Source: Mobula birostris
Taxonomy: Eukaryota
Reading direction: 5' to 3'
NCBI RefSeq assembly: GCF_030028105.1
Contig: NC_092383.1
Coordinates: 96,867,604-96,931,603 of the forward strand
Length of the DNA: 64,000 nucleotides
In this document: piece by piece, positions 1-63,613 of the stretch
Position numbering within the stretch: the stretch's first letter is position 1
How the letters are laid out: each line of letters opens with the position of its first letter
The notes under the pieces: model-generated
Databases searched by the model: none
What the model was told of the DNA's origin: nothing
Seen by the model: only the letters and a program-made list of their open reading frames with translations
Made by a program: the position numbers and the translations under genes

Positions 1-407
1 GGGGAGGGATGGAGCCAAGAGCTGGACAGGTGATTGGCAAAGGGGGTATGAGAGGATCATGGAACAGGAGGCCTAGGGAGAAAGAAAGGGGGAGAGGTGA
101 AGCCCAGAGGATGGACAAGGGGTATAGTGAGAGGGATAGAGGGAGAAAAAGGAGAGAGAGAAAAAGAATATGTATATATATATATAATAAATAATGGACG
201 GGGTACGAGGGGGAGGAGGGGCATTAACGGAAGTTTGAGAAATCAATGCTCATGCCATCAGGTTGGAGGCTACCCAGACGGAATATAAGGTGTTGTTCCT
301 CCAACCTGAGTGTGGCTTCATCTTGACAGTACAGGAGGCCGTGGATAGACGTATCAGAATGGGAATGGGATGTGCAATTAAAATGTGTGGCCACTGGGAG
401 ATCCTGC
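1..407 (-). mobile_element. Penelope-like element 3' fragment (GIY-YIG C-terminus and 3' tail), running off the window start
   Basis: DLPVATHFN...LEEQHLIFRLGSLQPDGM is nearly identical to 26225-26640 and matches the PLE endonuclease C-terminus. Confidence 0.8.
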
Positions 408-523
408 CACAGGATACTGTCCAGGGGTTCTGTCCTCAGCCCATCCATGGGGGGTCTGGCATGGTGCATCACTGCAGCATACTCAGTGGGATTAGTCTCC
501 GCAACGACCTCCGGACCAGCAAA
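224..523 (-). CDS. Gene A terminal exon, ITSM TEYAAV plus Penelope-derived C-terminus
   Basis: Acceptor ttcttttgtag, phase 0. FAGPEVVAETNPTEYAAVMHHARPPMDGLRTEPLDSILW continues in frame into QDLPVATHFN...DFSNFR*. Confidence 0.72.
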   Translation of the reverse strand, partial: FAGPEVVAETNPTEYAAVMHHARPPMDGLRTEPLDSILWQDLPVATHFNCTSHSHSDTSIHGLLYCQDEATLRLEEQHLIFRLGSLQPDGMSIDFSNFR

Positions 524-594
524 CTACAAAAGAAACAGAACCTGTCAGCTCTGGCCGATTTAAGGGAAACAGGGACAGGACACACTGTGTCAGG

Positions 595-915
595 AATTCT
601 TGGAGACTGGGAAACATAGCCAGGGAAATAGAGTCCAGGACCCATTCAGGGAGATAGAGACCAGAACACAGAGACAGGACCTGGAGACAGCACACAGAAA
701 CAAGGAGATACAGACTGGGAGCCGTAGACAGGACATCGAGATAGGAAGATACAGACCAGGACCCTGGGACAGGGAGATACAGATGAGGACACAGAGGCAT
801 GGAGATTTAGACAAGGACACGGAAGCAAGGAGATACAGACCAGGACCGGGAGACAAGACACAGAGACAGGGAGATATAGATCAGGACCTAGTGACAGGAC
901 ATGGAGACTGGATAC
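595..915. repeat. Degenerate GA-rich minisatellite (gagatacagaccaggac-like)
   Basis: Recurring ~17-38 nt motifs; expanded in the paralog at 42735-43200. Confidence 0.7.
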
Positions 916-1219
916 AGAGATAAGGACTCTGGAGAGGGGAGACATTGAGACTGGGCACATCGACACGTGACACATGGACACAAAAGACCTGGACATGCAA
1001 AGCGACACACAATGATGGAAACTCAGATCACACAGTCAGCACCAATCAACTGACAAACAATCATACTGACCCAGCATCAACACGGTCTCACTCTCAGTGC
1101 ATTCGGAATGAACTCACTAACTGCCCATCGACACAAATATTAAATCCGCGACTAATCATCGGAAATGTACACACTGGGTGGACCGGGTGTGTGGCGGCAG
1201 AGTACCTCAGTCACTGGAT

Positions 1220-1530
1220 GTGTGTGATGGACAGTGTACCCTAGTGACTGTGTGTGTGAGGGACAGTGTTCCCCAGTGACTGTGTGTGGGGTGACAGTGT
1301 ACCCCAGTAACCGGATGTGTGAGGGACAGTGAACCCCAGTGACTGTGTGTGGGGTGACAGTGTACCCCAGTAACCGGGTGTGTGAGGGACAGTGAACCCC
1401 AGTGACTGGGTGTGGGGTGTCAGTGTGCCCCAGTAACCGGGTGTGTGAGGGACAGTGAACCCCAGTGACTGTGTGTGGGGTGACAGTGTACCCCAGTAAC
1501 CGGATGTGTGGGGACAGTGCACTCAGTGAC
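1220..1530. repeat. 63-bp minisatellite made of two ~31-bp subunits
   Basis: ggacagtg recurs at 1261, 1324, 1387 and 1450; the related array at 48515-48760 has a different organisation. Confidence 0.85.
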
Positions 1531-1791
1531 TGTGCGGTGTGTACAATCCAGGCCTGGAGATCACTGAGGCAAAGTTTCAATTGACTCCTCAGTGGTATGT
1601 GGGATCTTGCTGTGCCCCCGTGTGTGCGCTGCTGAGTTCCGCAGTGGTGGTTGGAATGATCTCCGGTGACGGGGACCTGTGGTTGATCCTGGGATTGTGC
1701 AGATTACATGTAGGCCTTATGTTCAGTCTGCCCCAAGGAGGGAGAGTGACCCGGAGTGACCTCTTTCCAGGGGTAACGTGTCTGTCATTAC

Positions 1792-1880
1792 CCTGTCATT
1801 CCCCTTGGGGGGCTGCCAGACACTGTGATTCTTCTGCATTCTCTGAAGATTTGTGTAAATGATGCCTGTCTCCGCTTGGT
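1792..1880 (-). CDS. Gene A exon 5, cytoplasmic, ITIM IIYTNL
   Basis: Acceptor ttctgtcccacag, 89 nt, phase 1-0, donor AGG|GTAATG; translation (D)QAETGIIYTNLQRMQKNHSVWQPPKGNDR. Confidence 0.8.
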
Positions 1881-2038
1881 CTGTGGGACAGAAAGGAGAG
1901 GTGACAGGATCTGTACTGAAACCATTCCCCACTTTATCTGAGCCCTCTCTCCCACCCCTGTTGTCACCTCCCTGCCCAGCCCCTCTCCCTCCCTCCCCCA
2001 AATACCAGACTCAACGACAGGGTGTCAGATCCACTTGC

Positions 2039-2173
2039 CTTCAGTCCCTGAAGTTACTTCCCTTCCCTCAGGTCTTCTCCTCCGTGTGACCGTGAGGATC
2101 ACTGTGAGAGCAAAGATCAGGAGGGTCCCCATCTTGAACAATCTGATCACCAGGATCACTGCATCTGGCACTG
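2039..2173 (-). CDS. Gene A exon 4, transmembrane segment
   Basis: 135 nt, phase 1-1, CAGCAG acceptor. VILVIRLFKMGTLLIFALTVILTVT followed by an RRRR stop-transfer; donor GAAG|GCAAGT (GC type). Confidence 0.85.
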
Positions 2174-2329
2174 CTGTAACAGAGAGTAGAAGAGGTTTCC
2201 TAATGAATTCAGTCCTCATGCTCCCAGTGACACAGGATTGATGAATTCACTCCATCCCTCCTCAGTCGGAGAAAACTCCCTGTCACCTCAACACGGTCCC
2301 TCAGTACCCTACAATCACCATCACATAAC

Positions 2330-2830
2330 TCCCCTCCAAACCCCACCTCTCCACCCCGCTCCCCTCCCTTCCAGCATCCCTCAGTCCCTCCAATATCCCT
2401 CAGTCCCCTGAGTCTTCATTCTCTCCGATCACTATCACCTCACTGTCCTCCACCCCACCCCTCCCCTCCAATACCCTTCAATCCCTCCATCCCTATTCCC
2501 TCCAATCACCATCAAATCACTCACCTCCAAACCCATCACCTCCCCTCTGATACCCATCAGTCAGCTCATCCCCCATTCCCTCTAATCAACATCGCATAAC
2601 TGACCTGTACCCCACCCCTTCAATACACCTCAGTCCCCTCATCCTCATTCCCTCTAATTAACATAGCATCACTGACCTGCACCCCTTCCCTCCAATACCC
2701 CTCAGTCCCCTCATCCCCCATTCCCTCTAATTAACATAGCATCACTGACCTGCACCCCTCCCCTCCAATACCCCTCAGTCCCCTCATCCCCTATTTCCTC
2801 CAGTCACTATCAGATCACTGCCCTCCAACC
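2330..2830. repeat. C-rich degenerate tandem repeat in the TM-C2 intron
   Basis: Repeated cctcagtcccctcatcccc / ctctaattaacatagcatcactgacctgcacccc units; shorter in the paralog at 49600-49790. Confidence 0.65.
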
Positions 2831-4484: not shown

Positions 4485-4565
4485 GAAGCTCCTCTACGCT
4501 GTCCTGTCTCACACTCCTGGGACAGGGGATCTAACTAAATTGCAACTTCTTCCTCTGACACTCAC

Positions 4566-4847
4566 GACATGTGTCCAGATTACAGACGTCCCCCAGCCAG
4601 ACCTGTGCGGTGTCCTCACTGATAGGGTTTCTGGCCTCACACCTGTACACAACATCCTCCATCTCTGCTGTGCAATCAACCCGTATCGTCTTTCCGTCTT
4701 TCCAGATGTGATGGCTGCTGTTGTCTCCTGTAACTTCTCTCCACCAACTAAAGTTGGTGGGGTTGCCAGAGGTCACGGAGCAGGTCAGGGTGACGATACA
4801 GATTCCAGTGATGTTCTGAGGCGTGATGTTTACTCCTGACACGGGCT
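4566..4847 (-). CDS. Gene A exon 3, IgC2 domain
   Basis: 282 nt, phase 1-1. (E)PVSGVNITPQNITGICIVTLTCSVTSGNPTNFSW...YRCEARNPISEDTAQVWLGDVC has four Cys, and the VYEPVS junction and NP-I/V-S motif typical of SLAM C2 domains. Confidence 0.93.
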
Positions 4848-4882
4848 CTGAGGGTGTGAGAAAGAGATGAAAGATGAGTAAA

Positions 4883-7800
4883 TATCCAGCGGGCAACGTC
4901 GGAGTGGGTTGAGAAGTGAGAGGGTGCAGCATGAAAGGGCTTTGGCTCAACGGGCTTTGATGGAGACGGGAAGAGGCTTCCTGCAACCGTTGAGTCTCAT
5001 AGTAACGGAATAAGTTACAGTCTTCTGGTATTTGGTACGAACAGTAGCATTAGAGGTATGCATCTAGGATTAGTGTTGTGCTTGGAGTGCCAGATGTGGG
5101 GACCCTGGGAGACCCCCAGCCTCCCCAAGGATTACATCTGCACCAGGTGCACTGAGATGAGGCTTCTGAAGGACCGTGTTAAGGTGCTGGAGATGGAAAT
5201 AGATGACCTTCGGCTAATTAGGGAAAGTGAGGAGGTGATAGATACTACCTATAGAGAGGTAGTGGATAGCACCCCATGACAGTCCCCCTCAGAAATCAAT
5301 ATATCGTTTTGGATTCTGTTGAAGAGGCAGACCTGACAAAGGAGGACCACAGTGAACGAGACTCTAGCATTCCACCCAGTGCCAAAATCAAGAGAGCAAG
5401 AAGAAATGCGGTAGTTGTAGGGGACTCCATCGTAAGGGGGACGGACAAGAGATTCTGCGAGCCGGACAAGGATACCCGGATGGTGTGTTGCCTCCCTGGT
5501 ACCAAGGTACGGGATGTCTCAGATCGAGTCCAGAGTATTCTGAGGAGAGAGGGCGAGCAGCCGGAAGTCTTGGTACATGTTGGTACCAATGACAGAGACA
5601 GAAAAAGAGAGGAGGTCCTAAAGAAAGATTACTGGGAGCTAGGAAGAAAATTGAAAAGCCGGACCTCCAGAGTAATAATATCAGGATTGCTACCTGAGCT
5701 GCACGCTACTGATGATAAGAATAGCAAAATTAAGCGGATGAATGTGTGGCTAAGTAACTGGTGCAGGGGGCAGGGTTTCAAATTCTTGAATCATTGAGAT
5801 CTATTTTGGGGAAGGTATGACTTGTACAAAAAAGATGGATTACACCTGAACTCAAAAGGTACTAATATCCTGGCAGGATTGTTTATTATAGCTATTAGGG
5901 AGGGTTTAAACTAAGTTGGCAAGGGGAAGGAAACCAAGGTGTTAGGGTCGAGGAAGAGGAAAATAGAAATAAGTCAAAAATACTGTTCAGCAAAGATGGT
6001 AAGAAGGACAGGCTGGTGAATATACAGGGTAATTTGCTGCAAAATAGAAATATAGCAAAATCGACAACAGATACTGATCTAAATGTACTGTACTTAAATG
6101 CACGCAGCATTAGAAATAAAGTGGATGACCTTGCTGCACGGCTGCAGGTTAAAAGATATGACATTGTGGCCATCACCGAGTCATGGCTAAATGACAGATG
6201 TGATTAGGAGCTGAATATCCAAGGATACACAGTGCATAGGAAAGATAGGAAGGTGGTAAAGGGGGTGGCGTGGCCCTGATGGTAAGTAACGATATCAAAT
6301 CAATAGAAAGAAGGACATAGGATCAGAAGAGGTAGAATCCTTATCGGTAGAATTAAGAAATGGCAAGGGTAAAAAGACACTAATAGCAGTTATATACAGG
6401 CCTCCAAACAGCAGTCGGGATGTGGACTACAAGTTGCAGCTGGAAATAGAAAAAGCGTGTCAGAAGGAAAATGTCAAGACAATTATGGGGGATTTTAATA
6501 TGAAAGTGGATTGGGAAAGTCGGAAAAGTAATGGATCTCAGGAGAGGGAGTTTGTAGAATGCCTACAGGATGGCTTTTTGGAGCAGCTTGTCCAGAAGCC
6601 CACCAGGGAACTGGCTGTTTTGGATTGGGTGCTGTGTAACGAACCTCAGGCGATTAGGGAGCTGAAGGTAAAGGAACCCCTTGGAAGTAGTGATCATAAT
6701 ATGATTGAGTTCAGTTCCAAATTTGAAAAGGAGAAGCTGGTATCAGGTGTATCGATATTTCAGTGGAACAGGGGAAATTACAGTGGTATGAGAGAGGAAC
6801 TGGCCCAAGTCAATTGGAAAAGTAAACTAAATGGAGGGACGGCAGAGCAGAATTGGATGAAATTCCTACAAGAAATAAGGAAAATGCAGGAAAAATATAT
6901 TTCAAGAAAAAAGAAAATCATGAATGGAAAAATGGCACAAATGTGGCTAATGAGAGAGGTTAAGGCAAAAATAAAAGCAAAAGAAACGGCGTACAAGGAA
7001 GCAAAAATTAGTGGGAAAAATGAAGACTGGAAGACCTTTAAAAACTTACAGAAAGAAACTAAGAAAGTCATTAGGAAAGAAAAGATGAATTATGAAAGGA
7101 AGTTGGTGATTAACATAAAAAAGGATACTAGGAGTTTTTTTAAATATATGAAGAGTAAAAGAGTGACAAGGGTAGATATGGGACCGATTGAAAATGATGC
7201 TGGAGTAATTATAATGGATAACAAAGAGATGGCAGAGGAACTGAATGAATATTTTGCATCAGTCTTCACAGTGGAAGACATGAGCAATATACCTGATAGC
7301 CAGAGGTATCAGGGAATAGAATTAGGTACAGTCAAGATAACTAGATAGAAAGTGCTTGGGAAGCTAAGTGGACTAAGAATAGATAAGTCTCCTGGCCCGG
7401 ATGAGGTGCACCCAAAGGTTCTGAAGGAGGTGGCTTTGGAGATTGTGGAAGCATTGGAAATGATCTTCCAGGAATCAATAGACTCTGGCATGGTTCCAGA
7501 GGACTGGAAGGTCGCAAATGTAGTTCCACTATTTAAGAAAGGAAGGAGGCAGCAAAAAGACCTATTACAGACCTATTAGTCTGACATCGGTGGTTGGAAA
7601 GATATTGGGGTCAATCCTCAAGGACGAGGTTATGAAATACCTCGAGGTGCATGACAAGATAGGCCGAAGCCAGCATGGTTTCATGAAGGGAAGATCCTGC
7701 CTTACCAACTTATTGGAATTTTTTGAGGTAATCTCGAATAAGATTGACAAGGGAGAGGCTGTGGATGTTGTGTATTTGGATTTTCAAAAGGCCTTCGATA

Positions 7801-8969
7801 AGGTGCCGCATATGAGGCTGCTTAACAAAATGAGAGCCCATGGAATTATAGGAAAGAATTGAAATGGATGGAGCATTGGCTGATAGGCAGAAAGCAAAGG
7901 GTGGGAATAAAGGGATCCTATTCTGATTGGTTGCCGGTTACTAGTGGTGTTCCGCAGGGGTCGGTGTTGGGGCCGCTTCTTTTTACGATGTATATCGATG
8001 ATTTGGATTATGGATTAAATGGTTTTGTGGCCAAGTTTGCGGATGACACCAAGATAGGTGGAGAAGCAGGAAATGTTGAAGAAACGGAAAGGTTGCAGAG
8101 AGACTTAGTCAGTTTAGGAGAGTGGGCAAAGAAATGGCAGATGGGATACAACGTTGACAAATGTACAGTTGTAATTTCGGAAGAAGAAATAATCGGGCAG
8201 ATTATTATTTAGATGGGGAGAAAATTCAAAAATTGGAAGTGCAAAGGGACTTGGGGGTCCTCGTGCAGGATACCCTAAAAGGTTAACCCCCAAGTGGGAT
8301 TGGCGGTAAGGAAAACGAATGCTATGTTGGCGTTCGTTTCAAGAGGAATAGTGTCTAAGAGTAAGGAGGTGTTGATGAGGCTCTATGGGGCATTAGTGAG
8401 ACCTCATTTGGAATACTGTGTGCAGTTTTGGGCCCCCTATCTTAGAAAGGATACATTGATGTTGTAGAGAGATCAGAGAAGATTTACGAGGATGATTCCT
8501 GGAATGCAGGGGCTAACATATGAGGAGCATCTGTCGGCTCTTGGATTGTATTCATTAGAGTATAGAAGAATGAGAGGGGATCTCATAGAAACGTTTCGAA
8601 TGTTGAAAGGGTTGGACAGAGTAGATGTGGAAAGGTTGTTTCCCTTGGTGGGTGAGTCCAGGACAAGAGGCCATAGTCTTAGAATTAGAGGGTACCCAGT
8701 TAAAACAGAGATGAGGAGAAATTTTTTTAGCCAGATGGTCGTGGATTTGTGGAATTCATTGCCACATATGGCTGTGGAGGCCCGATCATTGAGGGTGTTT
8801 AAGGAGGAAATTGACAGGTATCTAATTAGTCAGGGTATCAAGGGATATGGGGAAAAAACCGGAAAATGGAACTAGATGGGTGAATAGTTTAGCTCATGGG
8901 GGAGCTGCGGAGCAGACTCGATGGGCCGAATGGCTTACTTCTGCTCCTTTGTCTTGTGATCTTGTGATC
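4883..8969 (+). mobile_element. Essentially full-length, inactivated CR1 (ORF1 zinc finger/coiled coil/SGNH esterase; ORF2 EN-RT)
   Basis: ORF1 CxxC...CxxC, GDSIVRG and VHVGTND; EN YLNARSIRNK; RT LDFQKAFDKVPH, PQGSVLGP, FADDTK; several stops and frameshifts; (tcttgtga) tail; TAAA on both sides; the empty site is visible in gene B at ~52290. Confidence 0.95.
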
Positions 8970-9544
8970 TAAAGGAGATTCTTGTGGACACCTCGATCCC
9001 CATCTCCCCCATCCCATCCCCAACAGTCCAGAGTAAACTTCAAGCAACGCCCACCTCATTTTTACCCAACGATCCCTCACCCTTCTGTTCATCACTTGTT
9101 GCTGGTGGAAGTTTCCACGTGCTGAGCCCCCTTTCCCAAGCACAATCCACAAACACAATCGACAAACTCTCCATCATGTCCTGTTTATAGCACTCTATTC
9201 CAGGAATTCTCTCCATTTCCATGTCTTTTGTTCCTCCTGTGTGTGGCCCCGGCATCCCTTCGAAACCTGAGTGAGCCCCAGCCCTGACCTGCCCTAATCT
9301 GGTCCAAAACAAGACACAGCCCACTCTATTCTGTCAGTCTCTCAATCTCCACTCTGCCTGCCCAGATTATGATGACGTCTTGAGATCCTGAAACCTGAGC
9401 CATTTCTTACGTCTCTGTTCTCACACCCTCTCCCACCGAAAGCAAGGAGAAGATTCCTCTGACCCGATCCTTCTACCCCACTGGTCTCCACCTTCAGTGC
9501 ATCAACATCTATGCTTCCTGGCCCTTTCAATGAGACTCCATTGA

Positions 9545-10230
9545 ATCATAGAGTATTGCAGTGCCAAAACAAACCCTTCAGTCCATCTAGTCCATACCTA
9601 GTCCCATTGATACTTATCTGGACATCGCCTTCCACATTCCTCCCAATATTTATCCAAATTTCTGTTAGACATTGAAATCGAACCTGGTTCCAACACTTCC
9701 ACCTGCACCTTGTTCCACCCTCTGAGTGAAGAAATTCCTCCACCTTCCCCTATAACTCTGGTCCTCGAGTCCTGATACTCTGCACTCTTTCAATCTTATT
9801 GATACCTTTCCTGTACGTAGGTGACCAGAATTGCACAAATACTGCAAATTAGGCCTCTCCAAGGTCTTGTACAATTTCAACATAACATCCCAACTCCTGT
9901 ACTCAATAATTTGATTTATGAAGGCCAATGTGCCAAAAGCTTTTTTTAATGACCCTATCGACCTGAGACACTACTTTCAAGAAATTATGTTTCTGCATTC
10001 CCAGATCTCTCTATTCTACCGCACTCTTCAGTGCCCGACTGCTCATCATGTACGTTCCACGCTGGTTTACTTCCCAAGGGTCAAGGCTTCGTACTCGTCT
10101 GCATGAAATTCAACCTGACAATTTTTGGCTCATTATTCCTGCTGGTCCCAATCCTGCTACAGGCTTTGATAGTCTTCTTAACTGTCCACTATACCCACAA
10201 CTACTGTCATCCGCAAATTTGATGATCCAC
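9545..10230 (-). mobile_element. Deleted, old CR1 fragment shared by both paralogs (also 52865-53420)
   Basis: IEYRSWDVMLKLYKTL...RPNL motif. Confidence 0.7.
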
Positions 10231-10784
10231 TTACATTCCACTCCCTTCCCTCTTTCTTACATATTTTGACCAGTTTCTCCCTGAGTAACACCTCGCTCTG
10301 CTCTTCTGCCAAACCCACAACTCCCACCACTCCATGTCCCACTCCACTTTCTGGACATCCAGAGGAGGGGGGCTTCATATGAACTTTCACAGTTTCCCTT
10401 CCCTCCATGCAGGGAACCAAAAGCTGAAACAGAGATTGACGAGCACTCCCAATGCAGTGAACTGCACTCAGTGTCCACACGGTGGCCTCCTCTCCACTGA
10501 GAAACCAGGCACAGTGTCACTGACCACCTTGAGGGACATCTCAGTTCAGGCACAATTGTAACTCAGAAGTTCTAGTTGCTGTCACTTTGATTCTCCATCC
10601 TGCTCCCACTCTGACACACTGATTCTGACTTCTGACACTATTCCAGTGAGACCAATGTATAGACAAGGGCCCATCTCCAGCTGGATGAGATGCAGAACTT
10701 GTGGCTCTCCCTCCTTTATAGAGCTGATGTTCAGAACAGGTTCATTGTATGAAAAGTTTTGTTGACTACTGTCTGATTCAGAGA

Positions 10785-11130
10785 GTCATAGAGTCCCAGA
10801 ATACTACAGAACAGGAACAGGCCCTTCAGCCCATCTAGTCCATGCCGATTTCTTAATCCACCTTGTCACATCAACCTGCACCCAAAACGTAGCCCCCATA
10901 ACCATTCCATTCATGTACCTCTGCAAATTTCTTTTAAATTTTGAAATCAAACTCACATACATCACTTCTGCTGGAAGATCATACAACATGCTCAGCACGT
11001 GTCATGAAGGATGTCCTCTTAAACATTTTGCCTTTCACCCTTAACGCATGACCTCTAATTCCACTCTGACCCAATTTCAGTGGAAAAATCCTGCTTGCAT
11101 TTATACGATCTGTATCCCTCATAATTTTGT
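10785..11130 (-). mobile_element. CR1 3' fragment
   Basis: 3' UTR gaacaggcccttcagcccat and a catagag tail repeat. Confidence 0.6.
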
Positions 11131-12329
11131 AAACCTCAATCCCTTTCTTCCCCTACTCGATCCCAGAGGAGGTCTCTGTCTTTAACCCATGTTCATGATT
11201 TTCTATCTTCTGTTTTCTATTTCTCACCTTCTGATGTTCTCCTCCTTCAAATGGTGAACATTAACACTGGGATGGAGGATGTTGTAAGGTGAAGTCACCG
11301 GAGAGACACCAAAGCTGCTGGATATAGAAATGTCTGATTTCCAAAAACAGGCGTCATATTGAGACAATCTTGGAGGAAACAGCCTCCCGATTCAATATTA
11401 CATAATACTGTGACATGCTAAAGGTCAAAGGTAAATGCAGGATAATTGTACCGTTACAATGTACCAACAATGCTTCCTTGGCCCTACATAGATTTTTCAC
11501 CTACCTTGTCGTTCACACCCACACTCCAGACACACAAAATGAATGTTCATCAGAATTGTCTGGTCTGCAATCAACTCCAGTCCACAGCTACAGGAAAAGT
11601 ACTGTTCAGAGCTGCATTTTAAATTCAATCTACAATCCACCTTCATATCTGAAGATGGGTTCTGGTGAGATTAATATTTGTGTATTCCCTAACTACACAA
11701 TACGTCCTAACAGAGGAGAAAAGGTTTCTCAGCCAAACATTGCTGAGTGAGATTATTGTGAATGTGATATTACTGTTAGAGTGAGTCAGGAACCATATTA
11801 CTGTGTGTGAGTGTGCTGTTGTGTCCGTGTACTGTGTCACTCACTGGGACACTATATTCAGTGTAATGAATACACAGGGTCTCACTCAGCACAGCACAGC
11901 ATGAAGGCTGAGGAATAAACACCTTGCTGAGCTCAGACCTCAGTCTAGGGAATTAACAAGCAGTGGTCTGGGAAACTGGGATCCCTGAACATGACAGACC
12001 AGGCCTTTGACTGGAGATACAGTGTGTAAAAACAGATACAGACTGTTCAGGCCATTCACAGCAGGTCCATTCTCCCTGTGTGCTGAGCTCCCTCTGTCTC
12101 AGATACATGAGATTCCCTAATGTTGGTTCGATCCCTTCCGGCTCCTGTCTCAGTCTGGGTGGATATGACAGGTGTGTACTCCAACCTCACACTGACTCAG
12201 CCTCACTACACTGGGACCGTGAGCCCAGATCTGGACACGGGTAGTCAGTGGGGTTCAGTAAACAGGGAAACACACAGGATCTGCCCTCACCCATCCATTA
12301 GGGGTGTTTCAGGGACCGGTCTCACTCAC

Positions 12330-12650
12330 CGTACACCTCCAGTCGCACTGTTGTTTTATATTCATTTCCTGAACTTGCTGCTGTACAAATCACCTCATAA
12401 TCACCAGAGTCCTCTCTCCGTAGATCATGGATTTCCAGACTGACGTTCCCAGGATGAAAGGTTATCCTGTTCTTGTACTGCTCATTACTGAAGTAGCTGA
12501 TGTTCTCTTTCGAGTACTTCACAATCTTGATTCTGGGCGATACCCGAATCCAATGAACCTCAAAGTCTGGACTGACTGGGATCCCAAAAAGTAAGGAGAC
12601 TGACTGTCCCTGAGCTCCGGTCACAGTGGTGGGAGGAGTCCCAGTCCCAG
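12330..12650 (-). CDS. Gene A exon 2, IgV domain of CD2/SLAM type
   Basis: 321 nt, phase 1-1, acceptor ctcctcag and donor G|GTGAGT. Translation ...VTGAQGQSVSL...VHW...SLEIHDLRREDSGDYEV...TTVRLEVY(E) is a V-set fold with the D-x-G-x-Y motif and no B-strand Cys. Confidence 0.93.
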
Positions 12651-14859
12651 CTGAGGAGACAAGACAAGACAGTCCGTAGGTGAGGTCAGTGATAGGAAGA
12701 GGAATCAGACCTGGGAAAATCAAAGACACAGGAGGAAGCCAACCGGCCCATCATGTTGTTCCCAGCCCTGTGAGACAGACAGCACAAAGTTAGTGTTGTT
12801 TCATGCCGAGACACTGGGATACTGGGATACCCTCACTGTGTGTGTGCAGGGGTCAGGAGGTCAACTGATCAGACTCAAGGTGACTACCACTCAGCCAGAA
12901 TTGTCCCTGGATCTGGGTCCCCCAAGCTCTCCTAAAGAGCTGGTTCAGCACAACTTGAGCCATCTCTGGGAAATGTCTCACAGGCTGCACCTCCCGTCCC
13001 CAGGGGGTTCCTTGCACTGGCTGCTCCTGTACACTCTGCACTGTCCGACCTTCACCTGTTGCCTGGACATCCAGTGTCAGGTGGTGAAGGTGGAGTCCCA
13101 GTTAGAGTCTGTCTGTGAGGACTCTGCCACTCCTCATATGACCTTGGAGCAAAGAGGGTGTACAGTCCAATGCTACATTTTCTGTTGTCCGAGAGGGTCA
13201 GAATTCCCTGTTTAGATGGATAGAGGTCTCTAGTGAGCTGCTGTCAGCAGCCTGTGCCCCACCAGGGGTGATTGGCTTAAGAAGGGTGTAAGAGAATCTA
13301 GCTGGATGTGGTAGTGGAGATGGTGTCTAGCCTGACCTACCAGACCAGGCTTCCTGTTGAATAGTTCACGTCTATACATTGTCGTCAACATCCTTTCGTG
13401 CATGTTCTCCCTGTTCCAACTGCTCCCAGTCACCCATTGACCAGATAATCTTGTAGCCAGCTTATCCCCATGGCACCCTGTCAGAGACACCCCTACACCT
13501 GCTTTCCCTATAGTTTTTTCTTCATCACAGTTCTAATGAAGAGTCTTTGACCTGAAATGTTGGCTCTTTTCTCATTCCACAAACGTGTCCTGAACTGCTG
13601 ACTGCTTCCCTCTCCTGTATCATACGATGGAGACAGAGATATTTTAAAAAATGGATCAGAGTGTCTTTGGGGCAGCTTCTCTGGATCTCACCCATTTCCC
13701 AGCCACGTGCGACTGTACAGTGAAGAAAGTGCTTAATACTCCTGCTCGTGGGACCACACAGATCTTTAGTACTCGGCCAGGTACGCTGTCTGGACCAGAC
13801 ACGTTAATGTAGGATGAGTGTAAACAGGTGGTTGATGGTTAGCATTGACCTGGTGGGTTGAAGGTACGAGTTCCCTGCAGTATCTCTCTCTGTCTCACTG
13901 TGGATGGCTTCTCCACACTGAGATGCTGGTCACTGAATGCACTGCAGGGCTGTGCCTGGATCACACTCAATAGTCACTTTATTCAATACAACCCGACACC
14001 TGCCCGTTAACAAATACCAAATCAGCCATCACGTGGCAGCAACTCAATGCTGATCTGCTGGGATTTTCACACACATCAAACTCTAGATACGACAGATAAT
14101 GGTGATTGAAACTAAAAAAATCCATTGAGCTGCATTTCTTTGTGCAGACGTGCCTTGTTTATAAGAAAGGATGGAGGGGAATAGCCAGAGTGGTCCAAGC
14201 TGACAGGAAGGTGACAGAAACTCAAATAACCACACATTACAACAGTGCTGTGGAGAAGAACATCTCTGATGCACAACACCTTGAACCTTGAAGTGGATGG
14301 GCGACAGCAGCAGAAGACCATGAACATACCCTGAGTGGCCACTTTATAAGATACAGGATGTTATCAATAAATGGCCGCAGAGTGTAAAATCTCCCCAGAC
14401 ACTGAGCAACCGGGGTTACATTCGCAAACATGACCACAAACGTCTTAATCTTTGTATTATTACCCAACCCACAAACACATCCTAACGCGGTTAATGGGAT
14501 CAGGGAGGAGTGACTCAGAGTCTGGTGTGGCTTTCAGTTCCTGTGGCACTGGCATTAGTACTGGAGAAGGAGAGCACTGTTCCACTGGGACAGACTGTGA
14601 TCAGACTTCCACTGAATCCAATCACGAGGGAGGTAGACTGAGTTGAAATTCCATAAAACTGTGTTGGGAGGAGGACCCCAATGCTGGGAAATCTGGAAGG
14701 TTGAAGAGGAGCAACAAGGAAGGGGAGAGGGGTCTCGATAAACAGGAGGAGTACAAACTGAATTTGTCTAAACCTAAACAAACTACTGAAGATCATATGT
14801 GAGAGTTCACTCTGCAGGAAAGTGATCATGATGCTTTTGTCATGGTGTCAGAACAACAT

Positions 14860-15070
14860 AGACCTCAACATAATCAAGACAGAAGATCTAGTTGTTGACC
14901 CAAGGAAGTGCGTGAGTGTATACACAACCCTGTCCTGATCAAAACAGCTACTGTAGAGATGGTTGACAGATTCGAAGCAGACATCCTTATCAACAGCATA
15001 GTCTCCAGGTCTCTCCAACTCACACAGTGACCAAGAAAGCACATCAACCCAAATTGAATAAAAGTGATCA
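14860..15070 (+). mobile_element. Degenerate Rex1/L2-type LINE fragment (paralog 62655-62880)
   Basis: LNIIKTEDLVVDPRK...PVLIK...VEMV resembles the Rex/L2 RT C-terminal motif KTKELIVDFRK. Confidence 0.55.
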
Positions 15071-15589
15071 ATACAAACAGAGCTTAACAATCCCTGTGAT
15101 CCCAAATGAGACACCTGCAACACAAAGTGAAAACCTACTTTGTTCAAAGAGAAACAATTAGACACGAAAAGTTCACAGTCCAAGGAACACTACGTACCCA
15201 TGAGGTGACACTGAGAAAATACAATCCACATACAAACTGATAAAATCCCTTTCTTCTTTAAAAACAACCCATAGTTCTGACACAGACACCTTACTCAAGT
15301 TTCCCATTGTGTGTTACATGTTCTTTCTAACACACACATACACACACACACACTCACACACACACACATATGCAAACACTCACACTCTCTGCTCTGTTGT
15401 TCCATTTTGTGATCCGGGTTCACAAACACTTTGCTGAGCTCGTGTCAACATGACGAGCAGGAGCAGGAAGCGGACGTGCTACCACTGAACCATACAACAT
15501 ATTCACCTGCCCCTGGCTAAAACATTTTCTTGCCACTTTCCTTGATTTCCTTAATATATAGAAATCTATCAATGAAAGAAGAATTTCTA

Positions 15590-16310
15590 GATCACCGGAG
15601 AATCCCAGTGATTTACCACAGTATGCCGGCTGGCTTCGTAATGACCTGGTATGGGAGCACCATGTATTTGAACAGAAGATCCTACAAAATGTAGCGAATT
15701 CGTTCCAGTACATTGCGGATAAAACCTTCCCAGCCACTGAAAGCATCTACGTGAAACATTGCCATAATCAAAGATCCTCACCAGCCAGGCCATGCTCTTT
15801 TCTCACTGCTGTCATCAGGTAGAAGGTACAAATAAAAATTAAATTAATTTATAAATAACTAAATTAATAAATTTATAAATGTGGTTGGCGGATTGATGTT
15901 TTTTTATAGAAGCTTGTATGGCATATAGTTCTGGGTTTGTGCTCCAAATGGGTTTTTTTTCCCCTGTTTTTTTTGTTATTAGGGTTTTTTTTCTGTTTTA
16001 GTTAGTAGGGGTTCTTTTTTTCTTTATTTTTCCATAAAAAGAGGCTTTAACATTTTGTTTTTTTATTATTATTGATATACTGTAAAAAAAAAGAAGGTAC
16101 AAGAGCCTCAGGACTTACACCACCAGCTTCAAGAACAGGTTATTTATTGATATTTATTTATATTTGTATTTGGACAGTTTGTTGTCTATTGATCCTGTTT
16201 ACAGTTCATGTTCTATAGATTTGCTCAGTATGCCCGCAGAGAAAGAATCTCAGAGTTGTATGTGATGACATATACGTACTCTGATAATAAAACTTATTTT
16301 GAACTTTTTG
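15590..16310 (+). mobile_element. Rex1/L2-type LINE 3' fragment, interrupted by an L1 tail
   Basis: WYGS...EQKILQNV...QYIADKTFP motif and an aataaaac...tttgaact tail; paralog at 63820-64000. Confidence 0.7.
15832..16091 (+). mobile_element. 5'-truncated L1-type 3' UTR insertion with 11-bp TSD
   Basis: T-rich UTR ending in an A-run; agaaggtacaa at 15821-15831 and 16092-16102. Confidence 0.75.
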
Positions 16311-18889: not shown

Positions 18890-18944
18890 AGAGTGAGGCG
18901 CAAAGAGTTAGCCAGCAGGAGATCAGCAGATGCCTGGTGTTCAT
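18890..18944 (-). CDS. SLAM/CD2-like receptor gene A, exon 1 (signal peptide MNTRHLLISCWLTLCASL)
   Basis: ATG with A at -3 (ACAATGA), 18 codons with a hydrophobic core, then phase-1 donor T|GTAAGT; the phase matches the IgV acceptor. Confidence 0.8.
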
Positions 18945-20835: not shown

Positions 20836-20989
20836 CAGCAGAGGAAGTCAGAGAATGGACAAAGCAGCTGAGCAGAGGAGGGAGTGTCCACAGCATGAAG
20901 TTTACTCGCTCTTTGGAAAGACCAATGACGGGGAGGTGCATTGACTTAGTTGTTACGTGAGCAAGATGTGCTGCTGGATCTCCAGATGA

Positions 20990-23900
20990 CCATAAGATAT
21001 AGGAACAGAATTAGGCCATTTGGCCCATCAAGTTTGCTCTGTCATTTCATCATGGCTGATCCATTTTTCCTATCAGCCTCAATTACTTGCTTTGCCCCTG
21101 TATCACTTCATGTTTTGATCAATGAAAAATCTATCAACCTCTGCCTTAAATATACATAAAGAATTGGCCTCCACAGCTGCCTGTGACAACAAATACCACT
21201 GATTCACCACTCTCTAGCTAAACAAATTCCTCCTAAACTCCGTTCAAAGAGAATGCCAATCTATTTTGAGTCTGTCCCCTCTGGTCTCCAAAACTCCAAC
21301 CAAAGAAAACATCCTCTCCACAACCATTCTATCGAGACCTTTTACTATTTGGTGGTTTTTAATTAGGTCATCCTTCATTCTTCTAAATTCCATTGACTAT
21401 AGGGCCAAAACAATCAAGCGCACTTCATATGACAAGCTGATTTATCCTGGAATAATTTTCTTGAACCTCCTTTGTTGCCTCTCCAGTTTCAGCACATCCT
21501 TTTTCAGATAAAGGTCCCAAAACTGCTCTCAACACTCCAGGAGTGGTCTCACCAGGGCTTTATAAATACTAAACATTTTATCCTTGTTTTTACGTTGTAG
21601 TCCTTGTAACATGAATGTGATCAGACTCAACTTACAACTTAAACTTTAGGGAATCCTATACAAGGACTCCTAAATTTCTCTGCACCTCAGATTTTTGTAT
21701 TTTCTCTCCATTTAGAAAATCATCAGTACTTTAATGTCTTCAACCAAATTTGCATGACCATACACTTCCCAACACTGTATTCTATTCACCACTTCTTTGC
21801 CCATTACCTAATCTGAGTTCTTCTGTAATCTCTATACTTCCTCAAAACTACCTGCCCTCCACCTATCTTCATATCATCTGCAAGCTTTGCGACAAATCCA
21901 TCAATTCCACCATCCAAATCCTTCACATATAATGTAAAAAGAATTAATCCCAACAGAGACCCTAATGGAACATCAATACTCACCGGCAGCCAACCAGAAA
22001 AGGCTCTCTTTATTCCTACCCTTTGCCACCTGCCTATCAGCTACTGCTTTAACCATGCACGAATCTTTCTTGTAATACCTTGAAAACACATTCTTAACAG
22101 TTGAATCCAACATCTTCCCGACCACTGAGGTCAGACTAATTGGTCTGTAATTTCCTTTTTTTCTGCCTCTCTCCCTTCTTGAAGTGTGGAGTGTCATTTG
22201 CAATTTTCCAGTCTTCCAGAACCTTTACAGAATCCAATGATTCTTGAAAGGTCATTACTAATGCCTCCACAATCTCTTCAGCCACCTCTATCAGAAGCCT
22301 GGGGTGTAGACCATCTGTTCCAGGTGACTTATCCACCATCAGACCTTTCAGTTTCCCAAGGACCTTCTCTGTAGTCGTGGTAACTTCACACATTACATGA
22401 CCCCTGATATCTGAAACTGCCACCACATTGTTTGATTCTTCCACAGTAATACTGATGCAAAATATTTATCCAGTTTGTCTGCCATTTCCTTGTCCCCAGA
22501 ACAGTATCATTCTCCAGTGGCCCAATATCCACTCTCACCTCTCTTTTACACTTTATGGTCCTGAAGAAATTGTTGGTATTGTCTTTAATATTATTGGCTA
22601 GCTTTACTCCATATTTACCTTCTTAATGACTTTTAGTTGCCTTCTGTCCAATTTTTTTGCTCTATTATAAGCCCTTTCCTTGGCCTTCATGTTGGCCTTG
22701 ACCTCCCTGGTGAGCCATGGTTGTGTCATCTTGCCTTTAAGATACTTCTCACTCTTTGAGACTTATATATCCTGAGCATCTGAATTGCTTTCAGAAATTG
22801 CAACCGTTGCTTCTCTGCTGTCATCCCTACCTGTGATTTTTTTTTCTCAAATCATTTCTGGACAACTCCTCTCTCATACCTCTGTGATATATTTTACTCC
22901 ACTGTTATACTGAAAGATCTGATTTTAGCTTCTCTTTCTCAAATTTTAGAGTGAATTTGACTACATAATGATACCTTACCCCTCAGGTTTCTTTTACCTT
23001 AAGCTCTCTGATCAATTCTGGTTCATTGCACAACACACAATCCTGAATAGCTGATCCCCTACTGGGCTCAAACACAAGCTGCTCTAGAAAGATATCTGGT
23101 ATGCTAGAAATTCCCCCGCTTGGAATCCCACACCAACCTGATTTTCCCAATCTACCTGCATATTGAAATCCCTCATGACGACTGTAACATTACCCTTTTG
23201 CAGCCATTTCCCATCTCCCATTGTAACTTGTAGACCACATCCTTACTACTGTTTGGGTGTCTATAGATAACACCCAGTAGGGTGTCTTTATCCTTGCAGT
23301 TCCTTAGCTCTATCCACAACAATTCAACATCTTCTGACCCTATGTCACTTCTTTCTAATGATTTAATTTCATTTTTTACCAACAAAGCCATGCCAGCTCC
23401 TCTGCCTTCCTGTCTATTCAGTGATGCCTACAATATCATATTTGCCAATCTGTAACTGTGCTACAAGTTTTTCAACCTTATTCCATATACTGCCTGCATT
23501 TAAATTTAATACGTTTAGTTCTTTATTCACCTTTCTCGATTTTGAACACCTTTTACATTACAACTCTTCCTGTTGTCTGCAATTATTCCCTATCATGTAG
23601 CTCTCCCTGCTAGGAGTCTCACTACACATTGCATCTGTTTGCATCTGATAGGGCTTATCTTCAGCACTATCATTCCAGTTCCCAACCCCCTGCTGAACTT
23701 GTTTAAACCCATCTAAACAACTCTAGCCAACCTGCCCACGAGGATATTGGAGACCCTCGGGATCAGGTGTAGCCTATCCTTTTTGTACAGGTCATAGCTG
23801 CCCCAGGAGAGATCACAAAGACCCATAAATCTGAACTCTTGCCTCACGCTCCAATTCCTCAGCTACATATTCACCTGCCAAATCATCCTATTCTTACCCT

Positions 23901-26167: not shown

Positions 26168-26216
<49 letters not shown>

Positions 26217-26224
26217 CACTGAGA

Positions 26225-26855
26225 AAGCAGGATCTCCCAGTGGCCACACATTTTAATTCCACATCCCATTCCCATTCTGACATGTCTATCCATGGCCTCC
26301 TCTACTGTAAAGATGAAGCCACACTCAGGCTGGAGGAACAACACCTTATATTCCGTCTGGGTAGCCTCCAACCTGATGGCATGAACATTGACTTCCCTAA
26401 CTTCCGTTAATGCCCCACCTCCCCTTCGTACCGCATCTGTTATTTATTTATTTATTAATTATTATTATTAATTTTTTTCTCTCTCTCCTTTTTCTCCCTC
26501 TGTCCCTCTCACTGTAACTCCTTGTCCATCCTCTGGGTTCCCCCCCTCCCCCTTTTCTTTCTCCCTAGGCCTCCTGTCCCATGATCCTCTCATATCCCTT
26601 TTGCCAATCACCTGCCCAGCTCTTGGCTCCATCCCTCCCCCTCCTGTCTTCTCCTATCATTTTGGATCTCCCCCTCCCCCTCCCACTTTCAAATCTATTA
26701 CTAACTCTTCCTTCAGTTAGTCCTGACGAAGGGTCTCAGCCCAAAATGTCAACTGTACCTCTTCCTAGAGATGCTGCCTGGCCTGCTGCGTTCACCAGCA
26801 ACTTTGATGTGTGTTGCTTGAAATTCCAGCATCTGCAGAATTCCTCGTGTTTCTG
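26225..26855 (+). mobile_element. Penelope-like element 3' fragment with decayed hammerhead
   Basis: GIY-YIG C-terminus with stop at 26408-26410, a pyrimidine-rich tail and a hammerhead core at 26719-26755. Confidence 0.82.
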
Positions 26856-27030
26856 TCCATGAAAGGGAGGTTGCTTTGTGTGACAGACTGGGCTGCACTC
26901 ACAGCTCTCTGCCATTTCATATTCAGAGCAGTGGCCGTACAAAGCTGTGATGCATCCAGACAGGATGCTTGCTACGGTGCATCTATAAAAAGTGGTGAGT
27001 CTCACTCGGGTTGTGCCAAGTTTCCACACC
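26856..27030 (-). mobile_element. Rex1/Babar-type LINE fragment
   Basis: FYRCTVASILSGCITALYG motif. Confidence 0.7.
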
Positions 27031-27374
27031 CCATGGAGCCCATTTTAATTGTAGCCACCTGTCTCCCTGGGTGCCAGGGGGCGGGGGGGGGGGGGAGCTC
27101 AACATGAATCATTCCATTTTAATTTCCAGTGGGAGTGCCTCCTTGTTGAAATTCAAATCTACCCCTCAGAGGGGGTGTTGCTCCAGTCCCAGTGTGATCA
27201 AGCATTGGTGTAACAGTTGAAGGGGGCTGAAGGAGGAGACCATCTATAATTTGAGCAGCAAACATCTCTGATATCCACAACAAGGTGAGTATCATACTCA
27301 ATCTATCACTTGGTGTGGGCAGAGTTCATCCTGCCGTGCACACAAGTGGGGTCCACGTAAGCACTTTGACAACT

Positions 27375-36195: not shown

Positions 36196-36200
36196 TTTTT

Positions 36201-42130: not shown

Positions 42131-42589
42131 ACTTCATTCAACCAACACACATCAAAGTTGCTGGTCAGTGCAGCAGGCCAGGCAGCATCTCTAGGAAGAG
42201 GTACAGTCGATGTTTTGGGCCCGTTTTGAGGCGTACCAGGGGGCTACACATTTATTTATGAACTGCTGTATGAGTCGAGGGTAAATAGATCAATAATCTA
42301 CAGGGGACATGTTCCCACAAAATCTGTTCCCCTGCAGAAAGCTAGTGACAACTGTTAAACCAATATTCAATACCTACAAAGCACAGCAGGAAAGAGGGGC
42401 CAAGTTTTTGTCCTGTAGACCTCAGCCCAACGGTGGGACACGGAGGACCCCAGTATCACCCACCAGTCCATATTCAATCCCCCCTGAGAGTCTGTGCCGT
42501 TCAGCAAGAAGAAGGATCAGCGTAGACTGTAGGACACTGTCCAGGAGCTCTGTCCTCAGCCCATCCACGATGGGGTCTGGCACGGTACA

Positions 42590-42643
42590 TTACTGCTTCA
42601 CAGTCAGTGGGGTGAGTCTGCAAACTACTTCCGGACCAACAAA
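42590..42643 (-). CDS. Gene B terminal exon, frameshift-truncated (FVGPEVVCRLTPLTVKQ*)
   Basis: Acceptor ttctgttgtag paralogous to position 524; a net -1 indel relative to gene A leads to TAA at 42590-42592. Confidence 0.6.
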   Translation of the reverse strand, partial: FVGPEVVCRLTPLTVKQ

Positions 42644-43326
42644 CTACAACAGAAATCCAAGTTGTCAGTCCACAATGGGTGAGTTAAGGGAAACAGAGAC
42701 AGGACACATTGTGTCAGGGAGTCAGAGATTGGGACACCCAGAGACAGGACCCAGGAAAAGGGAGATACAGACCAGGACCCAGGGACAGGGGAATACAGAC
42801 CAGGACCCAGGGACAGGAAATACAGACCAGGACACAGACAGGGTAATACAGACCAGGACACAGGGACAGGGGAATACAGACCAGGACCCGGGGACAAGAA
42901 ATAGAGACCAGGACACAGAGACAGGGTAATACAGACCAGGACCCAGGGACAGGGAAATACAGACCAGGACACAGAGACAGGGTAATACAGACCAGGACAC
43001 AGGGACAGAGAGATACAGATCAGGACCCAGAGACAGGACCCATAGACAAGGAATACAGACCAGGACACAGACAGGGAGTTACAGAGCAGGGAACAGAGAC
43101 AGGACACAGGCAGGGAAATACAGACCAGGACATAGAGACAAGGAAAAACAGACCAGGCCACAGACAGGGAAATACAGACCAGGGTCCAGTTAGGGAGCTA
43201 CAGACCAGGATGGAGTTAGGACATGGAAGCAGGGAGATACGGAGACAAGGACTCTGGAGAGGGGAGACATTGAGAATGGGCACATCGACACATGACACAT
43301 GCACACAAAAGACCTGGAGATGCAAA

Positions 43327-55146: not shown

Positions 55147-55421
55147 CTGAGGAGACAAGACAAGACAGTCCGTAGGTGAGGTCAGTGATAGGAAGAGGAA
55201 TCAGACCTGAGAAAATCAAAGACACAGGAGGAAGCCAAGCGGCCCATCATGTTGTTCCCAGCCCCATGAGACAGACAGCACAAAGTCAGTGTTGTTTCAT
55301 GCCAAGACACTTCATCAGGACTCCAGACTCTCTGTACCCGGCACTCAGAAATGAAGTTGCAACCTGCAGCCAGATATCAATGGTCAGGTGGGGGGGTGGG
55401 GTGGTCACAGATATTTTCTAG

Positions 55422-63181: not shown

Positions 63182-63226
<45 letters not shown>

Positions 63227-63350: not shown

Positions 63351-63613
63351 ATCACCTATCACCTGTCCAGCTCCTGGCTCCATCCCTCCCCCTCCTGTCT
63401 ACTCCTATCATTTTGGATCTCCCCCTCCCCCTCCAACTTTCAAATCCCTTACTCACTCTTCCTTCAGTTAGTCCTGACGAAGGGTCTCAGCCTGAAACGT
63501 CGACTGCACCTCTTCCTAGAGATGGTGCCTGGCCTGCTGCGTTCACCAGCAACTTTTATGTGTGTTGCTTGAATTTCCAGCATCTGCAGAATTCCTGTTG
63601 TTTGTGTTTTTAA
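63351..63613 (+). mobile_element. 263-bp 5'-truncated Penelope-like insertion with 13-bp TSD
   Basis: Matches 26605-26855; actcacactctct at 63338-63350 and 63614-63626; absent from gene A at ~15385. Confidence 0.82.
63470..63505 (+). ncRNA. Minimal type I hammerhead ribozyme (Penelope type)
   Basis: Stem I AGUC/GACU, core CUGACGA, stem II AGG/CCU, GAAAC-GUC with palindromic ACGU; predicted cleavage after 63501. Confidence 0.78.

What the first reader, a model, noticed from the sequence alone, without database searches (positions are those of the whole stretch)
1..223. Gene A 3' UTR runs, in sense, into a Penelope tail whose hammerhead should lie just outside the window
Seen: positions 407 to 1 on the minus strand are collinear with the PLE copy at 26225-26640, where the hammerhead core begins 83 nt further on. 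No AATAAA occurs on the minus strand between the stop at 224 and position 1. Inference: if the copy continues, a self-cleaving ribozyme sits about 300 nt after the stop codon of an immune receptor mRNA. Established parallel: hammerheads in the 3' UTRs of rodent Clec2 genes.
Basis: partly seen in the sequence, partly recalled or inferred. Interest (0 to 1): 0.78.

Follow-up and report, generated by a model that had tools for sequence, protein, structure and literature searches.

The report
Penelope retrotransposon tail in SLAM-receptor gene end
The end of a manta-ray immune-receptor gene carries an old, shortened Penelope-type jumping-gene copy whose small hammerhead motif almost certainly lies just past the window, but it looks like an ordinary, neutrally drifting passenger, not a working RNA switch.

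Summary
Window 407..1 (minus) is collinear with the Penelope-like element (PLE) tail at 26227-26640 (89.9% over 414 nt). There is no AATAAA/ATTAAA on the minus strand from 2040 to 1.

The window is Mobula birostris CM057569.1. Gene A is a SLAM-family receptor (XP_072133949.1).

I could not read beyond the window in this genome. The M. hypostoma ortholog has the same insertion. There the PLE runs 217 nt further, has the minimal hammerhead 81-113 nt past the edge-equivalent (core intact, one C15.2-to-U change), ends in a target-site duplication, and is followed by the native 3' UTR with the first poly(A) signal. So the prediction is very probably right as sequence.

The Clec2-like reading is not supported:
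- The PLE part diverges at the intron rate (6.1% against 5.1-5.3%).
- The motif is the loop-less PLE type, which does not cleave as a monomer, and no partner lies nearby.
- The element is extremely abundant.
- The "stop at 224" is the PLE's own. The natural TAG (409-407) reads TGG here.
- RNA contigs carrying this exon come from an insertion-free paralog, and gene A is annotated only as a tail-less isoform.

This scan already holds 58 Penelope-hammerhead notes, those listed being from this genome. Ordinary.

The parts
1..223 (-). Visible part of the PLE 3' tail (non-coding, after the PLE stop). It is cut by the window edge. In the ortholog it runs about 217 nt further and holds the hammerhead.
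   Evidence: collinear with 26410-26640 and with L001 26873-27095. No poly(A) signal.
224..226 (-). TAA, the PLE ORF's own stop codon. It is used as the stop of the gene A long frame only in this species.
227..408 (-). Last 60-61 codons of the PLE ORF (C-terminal half of its GIY-YIG endonuclease), 5'-truncated. The PLE/host junction lies at 409|408.
   Evidence: 165 relatives by phmmer; in P0197, P0196 and P0203 a GIY-YIG N-terminal half lies directly upstream of the matched stretch, and P0197 also has a weak RVT_1 hit; other genomic copies run on past 407 with PLE sequence.
407..409 (-). TGG codon where the M. hypostoma ortholog has TAG. The paralog gene C products also end at this point (...LDSIL). 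This is the receptor's native stop, lying inside the target-site duplication.
   Evidence: 408 G against A. (P0011/P0063/P0014 end ...LDSIL).
409..523 (-). Host part of gene A's last coding exon. The ITSM-like TEYAAV lies at 487-470.
   Evidence: joint 523>1792 in two RNA runs (paralog contigs); frame open; 1.7% divergence from the ortholog.
1792..1880 (-). Cytoplasmic exon with the ITIM-like IIYTNL.
2025..2198 (-). Transmembrane exon. The long form uses 2173-2039 with a GC donor. The annotated short form XP_072133949.1 uses 2198-2028, reads through the donor, and stops at 2027-2025.
   Evidence: joint 1880>2039, ends CT..GC..
4561..4848 (-). C2-type Ig exon of gene A.
   Evidence: Pfam ig, E 4e-6..
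12331..12648 (-). V-set Ig exon of gene A.
   Evidence: V-set, E 2.7e-12..
18891..18944 (-). Signal-peptide exon of gene A (ATG at 18944-18942).
26213..26857 (+). Reference PLE tail copy inside the window. Its hammerhead box at 26721-26753 is inactivated by three CpG-type changes.
63355..63607 (+). Third PLE tail copy. It is absent from the matching place of gene A's duplicate, so it inserted after the A/B duplication. Its hammerhead box at 63472-63504 has an intact core and one C>T in helix II.
42137..42220 (-). Short PLE tail fragment that starts inside the hammerhead box, downstream of paralog gene B's last exon.
42531..42645 (-). Gene B counterpart of the last exon. Homology with gene A stops exactly where the PLE begins in A, so B shows the empty site.

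Best explanation
Window 1-408 (minus strand) is the visible part of a roughly 625-bp, 5'-truncated Penelope-like element (PLE) copy. The copy holds the last 60-61 codons of the GIY-YIG endonuclease and a roughly 400-nt tail. It inserted in sense, by target-primed reverse transcription, exactly at the stop codon of the last exon of a SLAM-family receptor gene. The gene is Mobula birostris XP_072133949.1 ('gene A'). The insertion happened before M. birostris and M. hypostoma split. The tail carries the family's minimal, loop-less type I hammerhead. In the ortholog this lies 81-113 nt beyond the point where the window ends, with its catalytic boxes intact. I infer the same region is present in M. 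birostris (about 0.95) and that its core is intact (about 0.6). Because no poly(A) signal precedes it, any transcript that reaches this exon should run through the PLE into the native 3' UTR behind it. The hammerhead is a passive passenger. A lone minimal motif of this type needs a second copy to form helix III and barely cleaves even then. The element drifts at the neutral rate. Steps shown: the identity and extent of the insertion, the state of the ortholog, the neutral divergence and the gene model. Steps inferred: the letters outside the window in M. birostris, and the lack of cleavage.
For: PLE identity:
- Collinear tail copies.
- GIY-YIG/RT context of relatives.
- Minimal hammerhead box in sister copies.

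Same insertion in the ortholog:
- Window 2694..1 aligns with L001 24475-27095.
- The two share private variants against other copies, for example the (TA)n stretch.
- The PLE part shows 25 mismatches in 408 positions and no gaps.

Ortholog beyond the edge-equivalent:
- Hammerhead box at L001 27176-27208 with CUGACGA, GAAA and GUC, and one C15.2>U change.
- Target-site duplication TCCTGTAG.
- First ATTAAA at 27606.

Neutrality: PLE 6.1% against introns 5.1% and 5.3%, and exons 1.7-3.7%.

Activity and abundance:
- No partner hammerhead in L001.
- Rfam's hammerhead models do not match sister copies even at E<=10, as expected without helix III.
- Single PLE minimal hammerheads gave no detectable self-cleavage and dimers only low activity (PMC4209133; PMC6765202).
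- Summed word depth over 1-510 is tens of thousands of times that of the flanks in all four runs.
- The scan holds 58 'hammerhead Penelope' notes, those listed being from this genome.
Against: The 300 nt outside the window in M. birostris were not read. The look-up of encoding contigs returned no DNA for gene A twice and for paralog C once. The state of the hammerhead in this species is therefore an inference from one ortholog.

No cleavage assay exists for this sequence. PLE-tail RNA seems abundant in the RNA runs, so pairing in trans cannot be excluded.

Intactness of the ortholog's core after about 6% divergence is what neutrality allows (roughly 0.6), but it is also what selection would give.
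Confidence: 0.75

Rival explanations
1. Clec2-like regulation. The hammerhead in the 3' UTR self-cleaves the receptor mRNA in vivo, alone or by pairing with other PLE-hammerhead RNAs or with help from chaperones. This lowers expression of the ITIM/ITSM-bearing isoform.
For: The motif lies in sense with the gene, and the core is intact in the ortholog. No poly(A) signal lies upstream, so it would be transcribed. PLE-tail RNA appears abundant in the RNA runs, so trans partners may exist. Only tail-less products are annotated for the PLE-bearing gene in both species.
Against: The minimal hammerhead is inactive as a monomer in vitro and weak as a dimer (PMC4209133). No second copy lies nearby. The PLE part diverges at the intron rate. 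Short products are also annotated for paralogs (P0003 = gene B, P0015), so the isoform pattern is not specific to the PLE-bearing gene. The topology differs from Clec2, which is a discontinuous type III motif (PMC6155905).
Confidence: 0.05
2. In M. birostris the hammerhead just outside the window is mutated in a core position or deleted, so there is no ribozyme motif at all in this species. This is a sub-case of the passenger view, not exclusive of the best explanation.
For: The box holds four CpG sites, two of which involve essential G8 and G12. One of the two full boxes in the window has lost the core through CpG-type changes, and the other carries one such change in helix II. The ortholog has lost one CpG in the box. 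Of seven CpG sites in the visible PLE part, one is lost in M. birostris and two in M. hypostoma.
Against: The M. birostris copy keeps 6 of 7 visible CpG sites. The ortholog keeps all core positions. There are no gaps in 408 aligned positions.
Confidence: 0.4
3. Gene A no longer uses the last exon. It makes only the tail-less receptor, so the PLE and its hammerhead lie outside any mature mRNA.
For: NCBI products for gene A and its M. hypostoma ortholog stop after the transmembrane exon. All listed RNA contigs with the last exon carry paralog C variants and lack the PLE.
Against: The spliced long frame is open in both species. Splice sites are intact. The exons are more conserved than the introns. 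There is no poly(A) signal between the short form's stop and the window edge, so even the short form should run through the PLE unless it is spliced out. The contig tables are truncated, and contigs break at repeats.
Confidence: 0.2

Closest known systems
Minimal hammerhead ribozymes of metazoan Penelope-like elements (Cervera & de la Pena 2014, PMC4209133; Lunse, Weinberg & Breaker 2016/17, cited in PMC6765202)
   Same: Type I order: helix I, CUGANGA, helix II with a bulged A, GAAA, then directly the palindromic ACGU/GUC with no helix III loop. The motif sits in the tail of an element whose ORF ends in a GIY-YIG endonuclease. It occurs massively in a non-mammalian vertebrate genome, mostly as 5'-truncated copies.
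   Different: Nothing essential. This copy happens to lie in the terminal exon of a SLAM-family receptor gene and is shared by two Mobula species. The copy in this window is cut by the window edge.
Discontinuous hammerhead in the 3' UTR of rodent Clec2 genes (Martick et al. 2008, as summarised in PMC6155905 and PMC6765202)
   Same: A hammerhead motif in sense within the 3' part of an immune-receptor-type gene.
   Different: [quoted passage not shown] It cleaved in vitro and is regarded as a likely co-opted motif. Here the motif is a contiguous loop-less minimal type I from a recent repeat family, of a kind reported inactive as a monomer, and it evolves at the intron rate.
Exonised or annotated retroelement ORF tails at the C-termini of host gene models
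   Same: Database proteins P0070 (rhodopsin-type GPCR) and P0094 (RecQ5-like) carry the same PLE ORF piece at or near their C-terminal ends, and P0095 (NYAP) carries it internally. Gene A's long frame does the same.
   Different: In gene A the fusion arose by a TAG>TGG change at the native stop after the insertion. Whether the fused product is made is unknown.

Membership tests
Penelope-like element (PLE) copy | ORF ending in a GIY-YIG endonuclease downstream of a reverse transcriptase | tested here: met
   The 61-aa piece (227-409, minus) has 165 relatives by phmmer. In P0197, P0196 and P0203 the N-terminal half of Pfam GIY-YIG (E 3e-4 to 3e-3, just under the curated cut-off) lies directly before the matched stretch. 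P0197 also has a weak RVT_1 hit at 38-181. The piece itself hits no Pfam family. The Atlas gave only leads to GIY-YIG clusters.
Penelope-like element (PLE) copy | Hammerhead motif in the terminal repeat or tail | tested here: met
   Sister copies at 63472-63504 and 26721-26753 and the ortholog at L001 27176-27208 carry it at the same tail position. For this copy the place lies outside the window.
Penelope-like element (PLE) copy | 5' truncation and target-site duplication, as expected from target-primed reverse transcription | tested here: met
   The copy starts within the EN domain at 408. The ortholog has TCCTGTAG on both sides. Paralog B shows the empty site.
Hammerhead ribozyme (type I, minimal) | Core boxes CUGANGA and GAAA and a UH cleavage site, in this copy | not testable with these tools
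   They lie about 81-113 nt outside the window. The ortholog has all of them, with C15.2>U.
Hammerhead ribozyme (type I, minimal) | Helices I and II can pair | tested here: met
   By inspection of the ortholog sequence. Helix I pairs UAGUC with GACUG (5 pairs, one G-U). Helix II pairs GGGU with GCCC around a 4-nt loop.
Hammerhead ribozyme (canonical, self-sufficient) | Stable helix III and loop-loop tertiary contacts that allow monomer cleavage | tested here: not met
   GAAA(C/U)GUC leaves no helix III loop. No Rfam hammerhead model matches the intact sister copy even at E<=10.
Hammerhead ribozyme | Self-cleavage | not testable with these tools
   Needs in vitro transcription or cleavage-end mapping.
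Clec2-type regulatory 3' UTR hammerhead | Discontinuous type III topology | tested here: not met
   The motif is contiguous type I. Compare PMC6155905.
Clec2-type regulatory 3' UTR hammerhead | Conservation above the neutral rate | tested here: not met
   PLE tail 6.1% against introns 5.1-5.3%. The ortholog's 33-nt box differs at 3 positions from the form shared by sister copies.
Clec2-type regulatory 3' UTR hammerhead | Presence in a mature, expressed mRNA | tested here: inconclusive
   No poly(A) signal lies before it. The listed RNA contigs come from an insertion-free paralog, and the annotation gives only the tail-less product.
SLAM/CD2-family receptor (gene A) | V-set plus C2 Ig domains, a transmembrane segment and a cytoplasmic TxYxxV/I switch motif | tested here: met
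   Pfam V-set and ig hits. A 100% match to 'SLAM family member 7-like' XP_072133949.1. IIYTNL and TEYAAV lie in the long frame.

The most novel reading that the evidence does not exclude
The lone minimal hammerhead in the terminal exon does cleave in vivo, by pairing through its ACGU palindrome with the very abundant PLE-tail RNAs of this genome or with chaperone help. It would then selectively destabilise the inhibitory (ITIM/ITSM) isoform of one SLAM-family receptor in manta and devil rays. That would be a repeat-derived, trans-dimer-dependent ribozyme switch.
Probability: 0.04. Interest if true: 0.7.

Novelty: new member of a known kind. Interest (0 to 1): 0.2.

Why it matters
If the hammerhead worked here, it would be a second, independent case of an immune-receptor mRNA controlled by a self-cleaving ribozyme. 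It would also be the first case to use the dimer-dependent Penelope type.

The evidence points the other way. This is one of very many Penelope tails in this genome. It is shared by descent in two Mobula species and drifts neutrally.

Its practical value is as a dated insertion marker in the ray SLAM cluster. It is also a caution for annotation, because Penelope ORF tails can be read as C-terminal extensions of host proteins.

Tried and rejected
- **Rfam.** The gathering-threshold scan of the whole window and the E<=10 scan on the intact sister copy found no hammerhead. I read this as a limit of the models for loop-less minimal motifs, not as absence.
- **Exact-product look-ups of small edge ORFs**, meant to fetch DNA beyond the window. 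Nothing was on record.
- **Look-ups of gene A's annotated product** **and of paralog C**. The genes were found, but 'no DNA: the sample's file is too large'.
- **Pfam on the 61-aa PLE piece**. No family was found. This was resolved through longer relatives.
- **Splice-donor reading of the RNA break at 409|408** (GT at 410-409). Rejected. The break coincides with the PLE junction. The paralog products end ...LDSIL there. The contig variants reproduce paralog C residues.
- **Insertion polymorphism (a PLE-free allele) as the source of the RNA contigs.** Judged unlikely. The insertion is shared with M. hypostoma, and the contigs differ by about 10% in the transmembrane exon.
- **Search for a full PLE near the L003 copy**. 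None was found.
- **Hypanus sabinus locus L003.** The last exon was not found within the 10-kb flank, so the insertion could not be dated beyond Mobula.
- **RNAcofold of the ortholog motif**. The minimum-energy structures were not the hammerhead fold, so this was not informative.

Full report
**What is in the sequence.**
On the minus strand, window 407..1 aligns with the internal copy at 26227-26640 at 89.9% identity over 414 columns. In the internal copy the CTGACGA box starts at 26723, 83 nt beyond 26640. The stretch 26743-26751 carries three CpG-type changes that destroy G12 and alter C15.2 and G1.1. No AATAAA, ATTAAA or common variant lies on the minus strand between 223 and 1, and no AATAAA/ATTAAA between 2040 and 1.

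**What the repeat is.**
- The 61 codons before TAA 226-224 hit no Pfam family.
- A full-library phmmer search found 165 relatives.
- In three longer relatives (P0197, P0196, P0203) the N-terminal half of the GIY-YIG domain lies directly before the matched stretch. P0197 also has a weak reverse-transcriptase hit upstream.
- Sister copies carry the box TCCTGACGA-AGGGTCTCAGCC(C/T)-GAAAC-GTC-GAC in the tail. This is the loop-less minimal type I hammerhead described for metazoan Penelope-like elements (PMC4209133).
- Rfam's hammerhead models do not see it, even at E<=10 on the intact copy at 63472-63504.
- Summed word depth over 1-510 is tens of thousands of times that of the single-copy flanks in all four runs.
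- The scan already holds 58 notes on Penelope hammerheads, those listed being from this genome.

**What the gene is.**
The reverse complement of locus L002 (Mobula birostris CM057569.1) is identical to window 39297-64000. The window is therefore from that record. Gene A matches XP_072133949.1 'SLAM family member 7-like' (P0064, 278 aa) residue for residue. Its exons lie at 18944-18891, 12648-12331, 4848-4561 and 2198-2028. Pfam finds V-set and ig domains.

The annotated product is tail-less. It reads through a GC donor and stops at 2027-2025. A longer frame also exists. It uses the splice junctions seen in RNA contigs (4848-4566 / 2173-2039 / 1880-1792 / 523-). This frame is open in the window and carries IIYTNL and TEYAAV. 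It runs on into the PLE and ends at the PLE's TAA.

**The insertion site.**
Paralog gene B (P0003) is homologous to gene A up to 411 and then differs, so it shows the empty site. The M. hypostoma locus L001 aligns with window 2694..1 through the PLE. It shares private variants with the window copy. In L001 the host frame ends ATC CTG TAG at the junction. The same TCCTGTAG recurs at the 3' end of the PLE, so it is a target-site duplication. Paralogs C and E end ...LDSIL as well.

The native stop is therefore the codon at 409-407, which reads TGG in M. birostris gene A. The 'stop at 224' is a consequence of that change plus the insertion.

**Beyond the window.**
I could not read M. birostris DNA before position 1. 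Two look-ups for gene A and one for paralog C returned the gene but no DNA.

In L001 the PLE continues 217 nt past the edge-equivalent (27095):
- The hammerhead box lies at 27176-27208. CUGACGA, GAAA and GUC are intact, helix II can pair, and there is one C15.2>U change.
- The native 3' UTR then follows, with the first ATTAAA at 27606.

The two copies are 93.9% identical without gaps. M. birostris keeps 6 of 7 visible CpG sites. From this I estimate about 0.95 that the region is present and about 0.6 that its core is intact.

**Does it work?**
- Divergence between the two species is 6.1% in the PLE part. It is 5.1% and 5.3% in the adjacent introns and 1.7-3.7% in the exons. The tail is drifting neutrally.
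- No second hammerhead lies near it in L001.
- Single minimal PLE hammerheads showed no detectable self-cleavage. Dimers and trimers showed only low activity (PMC4209133; PMC6765202).
- The Clec2 ribozyme is a discontinuous type III motif regarded as co-opted (PMC6155905). The parallel here is one of position only.

**Expression.**
Two runs that the tool only guesses to be RNA, from the same species label as the best DNA holder, hold contigs that join 4848-4566, 2173-2039, 1880-1792 and 523-409. These contigs then run on for 611 nt unlike the window from 408. Their variants reproduce residues of paralog C (P0063), for example 4791 T>C giving Thr>Ala and the transmembrane-exon changes. They therefore come from the insertion-free paralog. 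No listed contig bridges 409|408. The tables are truncated and contigs break at repeats, so this is not evidence of absence. Because no poly(A) signal precedes the window edge, any gene A transcript, including the short form, should run through the PLE unless it is spliced out.

**Verdict.**
The prediction of a hammerhead just outside the window is very probably right as sequence. The regulatory interpretation is not supported. This is an ordinary, old, neutrally evolving Penelope tail in the terminal exon of a SLAM-family receptor gene.

Noticed in passing
window 407-409 (minus), L001 26688-26690: The receptor's native stop TAG (M. hypostoma ortholog; paralog C and E products also end there) reads TGG in M. 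birostris gene A. This extends the long frame by 62 codons into the PLE endonuclease fragment. I could not check whether the G at 408 is supported by reads.
   Followed up: partly
window 409-523, 1792-1880, 2039-2173, 4566-4848: The RNA contigs laid here belong to a near-identical paralog (XP_072135114/5, 'CD48 antigen-like'), not to gene A. The last exon differs by 1 in 115 but the transmembrane exon by about 10%, which suggests patchy gene conversion within the cluster. The 1880>2039 joint uses a GC-AG intron.
   Followed up: partly
window 8970-15765 and 52293-64000: Genes A and B lie in a tandem segmental duplication (87-97% identity). The PLE tail at 63355-63607 is absent from the matching place in A (15365-15378), so it inserted after the duplication.
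   Followed up: partly
window 42137-42258 (minus): Downstream of gene B's last exon, an AATAAA (42258-42253) is followed about 30 nt later by a PLE tail fragment. The fragment begins inside the hammerhead box, at the 3' strand of helix II (GCCC, about 42220).
   Followed up: no
proteins P0070, P0094, P0095: Public gene models of a rhodopsin-type GPCR and a RecQ5-like protein carry the same PLE ORF piece at or near their C-terminal ends, and a NYAP adaptor carries it internally. Capture or mis-annotation of this piece in host gene models is recurrent.
   Followed up: no
window 560-1000 and 1150-1580 (minus-strand intron of gene A): Two minisatellite-like blocks of short CT-rich and 'HTVTG...'-coding repeats lie in the last intron. 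They vary in length between the species and the paralogs.
   Followed up: no
window 5260-8973 (+), 36199-39857 (-), 20982-24450 (-): Three copies of a non-LTR (LINE-type) element with an RT-like ORF, 68-78% alike. One lies in gene A's intron between the C2 and V exons.
   Followed up: no
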